A stretch of DNA of 64,000 bases from Octopus bimaculoides (Eukaryota), in assembly GCF_001194135.2 (NCBI RefSeq), contig NC_068981.1, positions 8,703,662 through 8,767,661 on the forward strand. Reading direction: 5' to 3'. This document shows positions 53,058 through 53,322 of the stretch, piece after piece. Under the pieces are notes generated by a model. It was given only the letters and a program-made list of their open reading frames with translations. It was not told where the DNA came from and did not search any database. Made by a program: the position numbers and the translations under genes. Position 1 is the first letter of the stretch. Each line of letters begins with the position of its first letter.

Positions 53058-53322
53058 CAGGTAAGCCAGTGGAACAGGTATGACTCGGGTGAGCCAGTAA
53101 GCAGGTAAGACACAGATAAGCCGGTAACCAGGTAAGACACAAGTGAACCAGTAGCCAGTTAAGACACAGATAAGCCAGTAACCAGGTGAGTCACAAGTAA
53201 GCTTGCAGCCAAGTAAAACACAGCCAAGTCGGTAGCCAAGTAAGACACAGGTGAGTCGGTAGTCAGGTAAAATAGAGGTAAGTCGGTAGCCAGGTAAGAC
53301 ACAGGTAAGCAGGTAGCCAAGT
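53058..53322 (+). repeat. 27-bp minisatellite (9 full units) composed of 5' splice-site-like motifs
   Basis: Units start at 53075, 53102, 53129, 53156, 53183, 53210, 53237, 53264 and 53291; approximate consensus CAGGTAAGACACAGGTAAGCCGGTAGC. Confidence 0.95.

What the first reader, a model, noticed from the sequence alone, without database searches (positions are those of the whole stretch)
53058..53322. Minisatellite built from 5' splice-site consensus sequences: a ladder of about 13 donors in 265 bp
Seen: each 27-bp unit is itself three GT-containing sub-repeats. Plus-strand donor-like matches include CAG|GTAAGC (53058, 53302), CAG|GTAAGA (53102, 53129, 53291), CAG|GTGAGT (53183, 53248), GAG|GTAAGT (53275), CAG|GTATGA, CGG|GTGAGC, CAA|GTAAGC, CAA|GTAAGA and CAG|GTAAAA. 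Divergent units switch between valid donor variants (GTAAG/GTGAG). Established: U1 snRNP binds CAG|GURAGU and also suppresses premature polyadenylation in long introns. Inference: if transcribed on the plus strand, this could be a multivalent U1 landing pad, a decoy, or a ladder of alternative donors spaced in multiples of 27 nt. All three plus frames contain stops, so downstream donors would be poison or non-coding. It may also be a neutral satellite that amplified one donor-like seed.
Basis: partly seen in the sequence, partly recalled or inferred. Interest (0 to 1): 0.7.

Follow-up and report, generated by a model that had tools for sequence, protein, structure and literature searches.

The report
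Decaying minisatellite with splice-donor-like units
A real 27-bp tandem repeat (about 10 copies) happens to carry a near-perfect splice-donor motif twice per unit, but its mutation pattern and gene-free surroundings indicate an ordinary decaying minisatellite, not a selected U1-binding or splicing device.

Summary
Window 53058-53322 holds a 27-bp tandem repeat of 9.7 copies with 74% matches. Its consensus, ACAGGTAAGC-CGGTAGC-CAGGTAAGAC, carries two strong donor motifs and one weak one per unit. Nine sites score at least 10 of 13.1 bits with an approximate donor matrix; the rest of the window has 12 such sites over both strands.

The functional reading has no support.
- Donor positions are no better conserved than spacer positions: 24/176 versus 18/89 mismatches, p=0.21.
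- Core positions (-1, +1, +2, +5) show 13/79 mismatches against 29/186 elsewhere.
- Four of about 19 donor sites lost the obligatory GT and five lost G-1. One GT-to-AT change is shared by the two most similar units.
- Simulated random decay leaves 6.2-6.8 ± 1.8 strong donors; 9 are observed (P = 0.10-0.18).
- No exon abuts the array. No open frame within -7/+11 kb has a Pfam domain or a homologue.
- The open minus-strand frame is a by-product of the motif.

Donor-reiterating minisatellites are already known in human F7, IFI6, CBS, LMNB2 and PDGF. Transcription and genome-wide copy number could not be tested. Verdict: ordinary minisatellite, low interest.

The parts
53058..53322 (+). 27-bp minisatellite of about 9.7-9.8 degenerate units. 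In-register consensus ACAGGTAAGC|CGGTAGC|CAGGTAAGAC. 66% purine on the plus strand.
   Evidence: TRF, the repeat finder, unit table and column counts, composition. It is the only copy in the 64-kb window.
53058..53313 (+). Span of the nine near-consensus donor-like 9-mers (>=10 of 13.08 bits). Their GT starts at 53061, 53089, 53105, 53132, 53186, 53251, 53278, 53294 and 53305. Seven weaker sites (6-8.3 bits) lie between them.
   Evidence: Matrix scan of all GT sites on both strands. The minus strand of the array has no site above 2.8 bits.
52881..53366 (-). 161-aa open frame through the array, with a 9-residue repeat of the LTCVLPGYR type. Judged a by-product: the reverse complement of a GTAAG/GTGAG/GTAG-rich unit has almost no stop codons.
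   Evidence: the ORF listing. No homologue at E<=0.001 and not on record as a called gene. Mismatches by codon position are 15/15/12, p=0.81, so there is no third-position excess.
52620..52855 (+). Degraded copy of a tRNA-derived SINE-like repeat, ending about 200 bp before the array. This is context, not part of the array.
   Evidence: Alignment with better-preserved copies at 40180-40480(-), 35330-35620(-) and 60330-60480(+). None of those copies is followed by a similar array.
53716..53813 (+). Unrelated 20-bp tandem repeat (AAATAAGTGAAAAAAGGGGG, 4.8 copies) 400 bp downstream. It shows the neighbourhood is generally prone to tandem duplication.
   Evidence: TRF, the repeat finder family D2. 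Best donor score of its unit is 0.8 bits.

Best explanation
This is an ordinary, old, non-coding minisatellite. A short purine-rich seed of the form CCAGGTAAG(A/C) was first duplicated into a 10+7+10-nt compound unit. That unit was then amplified to about ten copies by replication slippage or unequal exchange, with at least one two-unit (54-bp) block duplication. Because the seed happened to match the 5' splice-site consensus, every copy inherited the match. Since then the copies have diverged by mostly neutral point mutation, which hits donor-critical bases as often as spacer bases. If the plus strand is transcribed at all, the motifs would behave as silent pseudo-donors that can bind U1 non-productively. 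That last step, like the origin by slippage, is inferred and not shown. No selected function is indicated.
For: Shown by tool results:
- Regular 27-nt register without indels at 74% identity, the signature of an old tandem array.
- Mismatch rates: donor 9-mers 24/176, other columns 18/89, Fisher p=0.21. Core positions (-1, +1, +2, +5) 13/79 against 29/186 for all other cells, odds ratio 1.07, p=0.86. My hand-computed rate ratio is 1.06 with an approximate 95% interval of 0.58-1.9, so strong constraint on the core is excluded.
- Four of about 19 donor positions lost GT and five lost G-1. The GT-to-AT change is shared by units 53112 and 53166, which are the most similar pair (88%) and lie 54 nt apart. 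The donor-killing change was therefore probably copied, not purged.
- The spectrum is 32 transitions to 10 transversions, with 17 G-to-A changes. The most variable column is the G of the only CpG in the consensus (5/10). This fits neutral, methylation-type decay.
- Random decay of a perfect array with the same number and kind of substitutions leaves 6.2-6.8 +/- 1.8 strong donors. Nine are observed, P(>=9)=0.10-0.18.
- No plus-strand open frame longer than 25 codons abuts the first donor.
- No Pfam domain in any frame >=45 aa between 49 and 64 kb.
- No homologue for any of the selected non-low-complexity frames >=38 aa between 46 and 64 kb.
- No Rfam family in the window at gathering thresholds, and only sub-threshold matches, none U1-like, in 52000-55500.
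- The window is a gap-ridden, repeat-saturated region: 282 TRF rows, 17 N gaps, and SINE, LINE and mariner debris.

Inference: about 9e-5 of positions score >=10 bits outside the array. Roughly 0.5% of random complex 27-bp units would therefore carry such a site on one strand, so donor-like minisatellites are expected by chance in a large repeat-rich genome.
Against: - Nine observed strong donors is on the high side of the neutral simulation, though not significantly.
- Donor 9-mer columns are nominally less variable than the rest (13.6% against 20.2%).
- With 42 substitutions in about 10 related units the power is low, and a weak constraint cannot be excluded.
- The units share ancestry, so the cells are not independent.
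- Among 29 arrays of period >=9 in the window this is the only complex one and the only donor-like one.
- As RNA the plus strand is less folded than its shuffles (z=+1.6), so the motifs would be accessible.
- Transcription, polymorphism and genome-wide copy number were not testable.
Confidence: 0.78

Rival explanations
1. The array is the internal or terminal tandem-repeat block of an unrecognised transposable element, and therefore one of many copies in the genome. It would still be neutral, but amplified by transposition as well as by local slippage.
For: The array sits in a 3.4-kb block between (GT)n at 52032-52087 and (CA)n from 55479. SINE debris ends about 200 bp upstream of it. The window is dominated by mobile-element fragments.
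Against: - There is no second copy of the unit or of its flanks in the 64-kb window.
- No terminal inverted repeats other than microsatellites surround it.
- The three better-preserved SINE copies carry no such array.
- No transposase or reverse-transcriptase domain lies within 49-64 kb.
- Pattern scans of metagenome and viral contigs gave only single chance matches, but those collections are not expected to hold this genome.
Confidence: 0.12
2. It is a junction minisatellite of the F7 IVS7 or IFI6 (6-16) type. The first unit would span a real exon-intron boundary on the plus strand, so CAG|GTAAGC at 53058 would be an authentic donor and the following units intronic pseudo-donors that are normally silent.
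For: The array starts exactly with one of its best donors, 11.99 bits at 53061. Precedents exist in F7, IFI6, CBS, LMNB2 and PDGF (PMC1557585). A pyrimidine run followed by AG lies at 52834-52854, about 200 nt upstream (read).
Against: - The longest plus-strand open frame ending at the first donor is 25 codons, and the other two phases are open for only 2 and 11 codons.
- That upstream sequence is SINE debris plus unique non-coding-looking DNA.
- No open frame of the neighbourhood has any homologue or Pfam domain.
- The candidate acceptor ends in GAAG, a poor match to the usual CAG or TAG.
- A non-coding (UTR or lncRNA) exon cannot be excluded.
Confidence: 0.05
3. It is a selected multivalent U1 snRNP platform within a long intron or a non-coding RNA on the plus strand. 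It would either suppress nearby cryptic polyadenylation (telescripting) or tether the transcript to chromatin or the nucleus.
For: - There are 9-16 accessible donor-like motifs in 265 nt.
- The plus-strand RNA has low predicted structure.
- A cluster of AATAAA/ATTAAA hexamers lies about 1 kb downstream on the plus strand, at 54281-54312.
- U1 motifs are known to drive chromatin or nuclear retention (bioRxiv 10.1101/310433 and PMC9074902).
Against: - Donor positions show no excess conservation, and donor-destroying changes were tolerated and probably propagated.
- There is no evidence of transcription or of a host gene.
- Polyadenylation hexamers occur at 1.7 per kb on both strands throughout this A+T-rich window, so the downstream cluster, which is itself a 17-bp tandem repeat, is unremarkable.
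- No related array was found elsewhere.
Confidence: 0.04
4. The array is a coding exon on the minus strand that encodes a nonapeptide-repeat protein.
For: A 161-aa ATG-initiated frame at 52881-53366(-) runs through the whole array. The unit length is a multiple of three.
Against: - The reverse complement of the consensus contains no stop codon in any frame. Across the real array the three minus frames carry 0, 1 and 2 stops, so openness is automatic.
- Substitutions are evenly spread over codon positions (15/15/12).
- There is no homologue among 5.8 billion proteins, no called gene and no Pfam match.
Confidence: 0.01

Closest known systems
Exon-intron junction minisatellites that reiterate a splice donor: human F7 intron 7 (37-bp VNTR), IFI6/6-16 intron 2 (authentic donor followed by 25 pseudo-sites; Turri et al. 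1995), CBS intron 13, LMNB2, PDGF (PMC1557585)
   Same: A tandem array of short units, each containing a donor-like sequence, giving a ladder of potential 5' splice sites on one strand. In those genes the downstream copies are mostly silent pseudo-sites, because the most upstream functional donor is chosen.
   Different: In the known cases the first unit demonstrably spans a coding exon-intron boundary in an expressed gene, and the copies are near-identical. Here no exon or gene could be found. The units are only about 74% alike, and half of the donors are already damaged.
Generic degenerate minisatellite (tandem repeat with a 10-100-bp unit) formed by slippage or unequal exchange
   Same: Unit length, strict register, higher-order block duplication, transition-dominated decay, and location in repeat-rich non-coding DNA.
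   Different: Nothing essential. The only peculiarity is that the seed resembles CAG|GTAAG.
U1 snRNP recognition motifs in introns and non-coding RNAs (telescripting; chromatin or nuclear retention through 5' splice-site motifs: bioRxiv 10.1101/310433; PMC9074902)
   Same: The sequence motif matches. Several units pair with 8-9 of the 9 U1 5'-end positions. On the minus strand CTTACCTGGC equals 10 nt of the U1 5' end as I recall it, which is the trivial complement of the donor plus 2 extra bases.
   Different: Those elements are defined by transcription and by U1 binding, neither of which is known here. The motif positions show no selective constraint. The sensitive Rfam scan of 52000-55500 reported no U1 match up to E=10.
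Recursive splice sites (ratchet points) in long introns
   Same: A juxtaposed AG|GTAAG.
   Different: Recursive sites need a polypyrimidine tract and branch point before the AG. Here the sequence upstream of every CAG|GT is purine-rich (array 66% purine). This defining feature is not met.

Membership tests
Minisatellite | Head-to-tail copies of a 10-100-bp unit in constant register | tested here: met
   Period 27, 9.7 copies, 0% indels. Start-to-start spacing is 27 nt seven times over.
Minisatellite | Variant units related by duplication and point mutation | tested here: met
   Pairwise unit identity is 59-88%. The best pair lies 54 nt apart and shares variants. The spectrum is 32 transitions to 10 transversions.
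Minisatellite | Copy-number polymorphism between individuals (VNTR behaviour) | not testable with these tools
   Only one haplotype is available.
Junction minisatellite of the F7/IFI6 type | First unit spans an authentic exon-intron boundary of an expressed gene | tested here: inconclusive
   No plus-strand frame longer than 25 codons ends at the first donor. Neighbouring frames have no Pfam domain or homologue. A non-coding exon cannot be excluded without RNA data.
Junction minisatellite of the F7/IFI6 type | Each unit repeats a usable donor sequence | tested here: met
   9 sites at >=10 bits and 16 at >=6 bits on the plus strand. About half of the 19 potential strong sites are degraded.
Functional U1 snRNP binding platform (telescripting or retention element) | 5' splice-site motif present in the sense orientation of a transcript | not testable with these tools
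   The motif is present on the plus strand only. The transcription strand is unknown, and no gene was detected on either strand.
Functional U1 snRNP binding platform (telescripting or retention element) | Motif positions under purifying selection relative to spacer positions | tested here: not met
   Core positions 13/79 against 29/186 for the rest, odds ratio 1.07. Donor 9-mers 24/176 against 18/89, p=0.21. The simulation gives P=0.10-0.18. Power is limited.
Tandem-repeat block of a transposable element or SINE tail | Other copies of the array with the same flanks, and element termini or coding domains | tested here: not met
   Tested within this window only. There is no other copy of the unit or flanks, no inverted termini and no array after the other SINE copies. 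Genome-wide copy number is not testable here.
Recursive splice site | Polypyrimidine tract and AG immediately before the GT | tested here: not met
   The sequence upstream of every CAG|GT is GTAGC or AAGACA, and the array is 66% purine.
Protein-coding repeat (minus strand) | Codon-position bias of substitutions and/or detectable homologues | tested here: not met
   Mismatches by codon position are 15/15/12. No homologue, no Pfam match.

The most novel reading that the evidence does not exclude
The array is transcribed on the plus strand inside a long intron or a non-coding RNA. There it would act as a multivalent, weakly constrained U1 snRNP platform that protects the transcript from premature polyadenylation or retains it in the nucleus. 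This would be a repeat-encoded U1 sponge in an invertebrate. The slight, non-significant excess of surviving donors (9 against about 6.5 expected) and the unstructured, purine-rich RNA do not exclude it.
Probability: 0.04. Interest if true: 0.6.

Novelty: new member of a known kind. Interest (0 to 1): 0.12.

Why it matters
As it stands it matters little: it is one more degenerate minisatellite in repeat-rich non-coding DNA. Its practical value is as a caution. A tandem repeat multiplies whatever motif its seed contains, so a dense ladder of consensus sites is not in itself evidence of function. The informative test is whether motif positions are better conserved than spacer positions among the copies. 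If the array did lie in a transcribed intron, it would be a natural invertebrate counterpart of the human F7 and IFI6 donor-reiterating minisatellites. It could then serve as a model for 5' splice-site choice among many competing sites.

Tried and rejected
1. Other copies in the window: a 27-mer search with 3 mismatches, and BLAST of the array and both flanks. Only the array itself matched, plus one 60-bp SINE motif. My first self-BLAST was swamped by microsatellites and was useless.
2. Copies elsewhere: a degenerate 19-mer scanned in metagenome contigs (48 loci) and viral contigs (5 loci). All were single matches, and none had a second unit within 7 mismatches, so they are chance hits. These collections are not expected to contain the source genome, so this is a weak negative.
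3. Minus-strand 161-aa frame: not a called gene, no homologues, no codon-position bias. Rejected as coding.
4. RNA families: no match at gathering thresholds in the whole window. The sensitive scan of 52000-55500 gave only a microsatellite-driven mir-297 match, two weak snoRNA-type matches (sno_ZL1, SCARNA7) on the same microsatellite stretch, and an 18-bit tRNA-like match at 52292-52362(-). Nothing was U1-like. ARAGORN found no tRNA.
5. Gene context: Pfam on 10 selected frames found only two RVT_1 fragments at 33.3-34.1 kb. Concatenated frames >=45 aa from 49-64 kb gave no Pfam family. Concatenated frames >=38 aa from 46-64 kb gave no homologue.
6. Organism identity: a LINE C-terminal frame (24156-24623) gave at best 60% identity, to unnamed ENA and TARA contigs, with a few Penaeus indicus proteins at lower identity. 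The contig look-ups carried no organism names.
7. Inverted repeats around the array: only microsatellite pairs.
8. Turri et al. 1995 (PMC306954) is not held in the library. It is cited only through PMC1557585.
The repeat of that query returned nothing specific about tandem-repeat U1 decoys.

Full report
**What is there.** Window 53058-53322 is a genuine tandem repeat. Tandem Repeats Finder reports period 27, 9.7 copies, 74% matches and no indels. The repeat finder places eight long copies at exactly 27-nt spacing. In register, with one extra base in the first unit, the consensus is ACAGGTAAGC-CGGTAGC-CAGGTAAGAC. Each unit is therefore a compound of two 10-nt sub-repeats of the form CCAGGTAAG and a shortened 7-nt one. 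The raised identity at internal lags of 11 and 16 nt shows the same thing. The plus strand is 66% purine.

**The donor motifs.** I scored all GT dinucleotides on both strands with an approximate Shapiro-Senapathy-type matrix written from my own knowledge; it is not MaxEntScan.
- The array holds 9 sites at >=10 bits (maximum 13.08), 10 at >=8 and 16 at >=6, all on the plus strand.
- The other 127 kb of strand sequence in the window hold only 12 sites at >=10 bits.
- The minus strand of the array has no site above 2.8 bits.
- All three plus-strand frames contain 8-10 stops.

**Is it more than chance?** The local density is far above background. However, the copies are duplicates of each other, so the independent event is that one or two seed motifs resembled CAG|GTAAG. 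From the background frequency of sites at >=10 bits (about 9e-5 per position), roughly 0.5% of random complex 27-bp units would carry one on some strand. This figure is my inference. A large repeat-rich genome should therefore contain such arrays by chance. Within this window it is the only one of 29 arrays of period >=9 with a donor-like unit, but nearly all the others are compound microsatellites.

**Test for selection on the donors.** If the array were maintained as a set of U1 sites or splice donors, donor-critical bases should vary less among units than spacer bases. They do not.

| Column class | Mismatches to consensus | Comparison |
|---|---|---|
| Two donor 9-mers | 24/176 | vs other columns, Fisher p=0.21 |
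| Other columns | 18/89 | |
| Core positions (-1, +1, +2, +5) | 13/79 | vs all other cells, odds ratio 1.07, p=0.86 |
| All non-core cells | 29/186 | |

- My hand-computed rate ratio for the core is 1.06, with an approximate 95% interval of 0.58-1.9. This excludes strong constraint but not weak constraint.
- Of about 19 potential strong donors, four have lost the obligatory GT: AT twice, CC once and TT once. Five have lost G-1.
- The GT-to-AT change is shared by units 53112 and 53166. These are the most similar pair (88%) and lie 54 nt apart. A donor-killing mutation was therefore probably copied by a two-unit block duplication and not removed.
- The substitution spectrum is 32 transitions to 10 transversions, with 17 G-to-A changes. 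The most variable column is the G of the only CpG in the consensus. This is what neutral, methylation-influenced decay looks like.
- I let a perfect array decay at random with the same number and kinds of changes. It retains 6.2-6.8 +/- 1.8 strong donors; nine are observed, P(>=9)=0.10-0.18.

The caveat is that ten related units give limited power.

**Surroundings.**
- The window is a draft eukaryotic assembly with 17 N gaps and 282 TRF rows.
- It carries mobile-element debris. Pfam supports RVT_1 fragments at 33.3-34.1 kb. By eye there are also endonuclease, reverse-transcriptase and C-terminal LINE fragments and mariner-like pieces.
- Upstream of the array lie a fragment and a degraded copy of a tRNA-derived SINE-like repeat, at 52510-52600 and 52620-52855 on the plus strand. 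They are recognisable by alignment to better copies at 40180-40480(-), 35330-35620(-) and 60330-60480(+).
- The array begins about 200 bp after that debris. None of the other SINE copies is followed by anything similar, so it is not a SINE tail.
- The unit and both flanks are unique in the window.
- No inverted termini surround it.
- A second, unrelated 20-bp tandem repeat lies 400 bp downstream.

**Gene context and strand.**
- On the plus strand, the longest open frame ending at the first donor is 25 codons. There is no sign of the coding exon that defines the F7/IFI6 type of junction minisatellite.
- No frame >=45 aa between 49 and 64 kb has a Pfam domain.
- A concatenation of the selected non-low-complexity frames >=38 aa between 46 and 64 kb, on both strands, has no homologue among 5.8 billion proteins.
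- No Rfam family matches the window at gathering thresholds. The sensitive scan of 52000-55500 reported nothing U1-like.

There is thus no evidence that the locus lies in a gene. With long introns this cannot be excluded, and transcription itself is untestable here.

**The minus-strand frame.** The 161-aa frame through the array is an automatic consequence of the motif. The reverse complement of a GTAAG/GTGAG/GTAG-rich unit contains almost no stops. The frame has no homologue and is not a called gene. It shows no codon-position bias (15/15/12).

**Other checks.** As RNA the plus strand is slightly less structured than its shuffles (z=+1.6). This follows from the purine bias and would leave the motifs accessible if the strand were transcribed. 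Plus-strand polyadenylation hexamers cluster about 1 kb downstream. That cluster is itself an A+T-rich tandem repeat, and such hexamers occur at 1.7 per kb on both strands of the window.

**Relatives elsewhere.** A degenerate 19-mer from the unit found 48 metagenome and 5 viral contigs. Each had a single match and no neighbouring unit, so these are chance matches. These collections are not expected to include the source genome. The organism could not be named. The best relatives of a LINE frame are at most 60% identical and come from unnamed ENA and TARA assemblies, with a few shrimp proteins at lower identity. The SINE core reminds me of cephalopod SINEs; that is an untested recollection.

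**Comparison with what is known.** Minisatellites that reiterate a splice donor are established. PMC1557585 describes the following:
- The human F7 intron 7 VNTR (37 bp), whose first unit spans the exon-intron junction. Its downstream pseudo-sites are functional but silent, because the most upstream site wins.
- CBS intron 13, LMNB2 and PDGF.

U1 recognition motifs outside productive splice sites are known to cause chromatin or nuclear retention (bioRxiv 10.1101/310433; PMC9074902). The present array resembles these in sequence logic only. The defining features of each functional class (an abutting exon, transcription, constraint on motif positions) were either not met or not testable. Recursive splice sites are excluded because no pyrimidine tract precedes the AG.

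**Verdict.** This is a real, correctly described, but ordinary degenerate minisatellite whose seed happens to match the 5' splice-site consensus. The best-supported mechanism is slippage or unequal-exchange amplification followed by neutral decay (confidence about 0.78). The remaining probability is spread as follows:
- an unrecognised transposable-element repeat block, 0.12
- a junction minisatellite at a non-coding exon, 0.05
- a functional U1 platform, 0.04
- a minus-strand coding exon, 0.01

Interest is low.

Noticed in passing
window 40180-40480(-), 35330-35620(-), 60330-60480(+), 52620-52855(+), 52510-52600(+): A family of tRNA-derived SINE-like repeats. They carry A-box-like TGGCAGAATGGTTAGC, B-box-like GAGTTCAAATTCC, and a conserved core GTCGACTTTGCCTTTCATCC...GGGGTCGATAAATTAAGTACCAG. 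There are at least five copies or fragments in 64 kb. The core reminds me of cephalopod SINEs, but that is an untested recollection.
   Followed up: partly
window 52292-52362(-): A weak tRNA-like Rfam match (18 bits, E=3.6, below the gathering score of 29). It may be another eroded SINE head or chance.
   Followed up: no
window 32505-34064(+), 27962-28685, 24156-24623(+), 15453-15719(+), 4912-5151(-): Fragments of non-LTR retrotransposons. Pfam supports RVT_1 at 33307-34064. Endonuclease-like and C-terminal LINE frames were recognised by eye. The C-terminal frame has relatives at 41-69% identity in many unnamed marine eukaryote assemblies and in Penaeus indicus.
   Followed up: partly
window 261-503(+) and 43361-43606(+): Frames that look like mariner/Tc1 transposase pieces (for example ...ITGDESWCYG and ...LPDLPYLNPIDFYVWS). 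There was no Pfam hit at E<=0.01, so this rests on recollection only.
   Followed up: partly
window 53716-53813(+), with a lone TAAGTGAAAAAA at 52634: A 20-bp tandem repeat (AAATAAGTGAAAAAAGGGGG, 4.8 copies, 89% matches) 400 bp downstream of the array. A 12-nt piece of its unit also occurs once, 1.1 kb upstream.
   Followed up: no
window 30528-30600(+): A perfectly homogeneous 12-bp tandem repeat (AAGTTACACTTC, 6.1 copies, 100% identity) followed directly by (GT)n. It must be very young or recently homogenised, in contrast with the decayed 27-bp array.
   Followed up: no
whole window: 17 runs of N (10-929 bases) and 282 TRF rows. This is a heavily gapped short-read-style scaffold saturated with microsatellites: CA/GT, GA/CT, and TATG/ACAT-type tetranucleotide arrays. 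The copy number of any tandem array in it, including the 27-bp one, may be under-assembled.
   Followed up: partly
window 52032-52102(+): The Rfam 'mir-297' match (34 bits against a gathering score of 90) falls on the (GT)n microsatellite. It is a low-complexity artefact, not a microRNA.
   Followed up: yes
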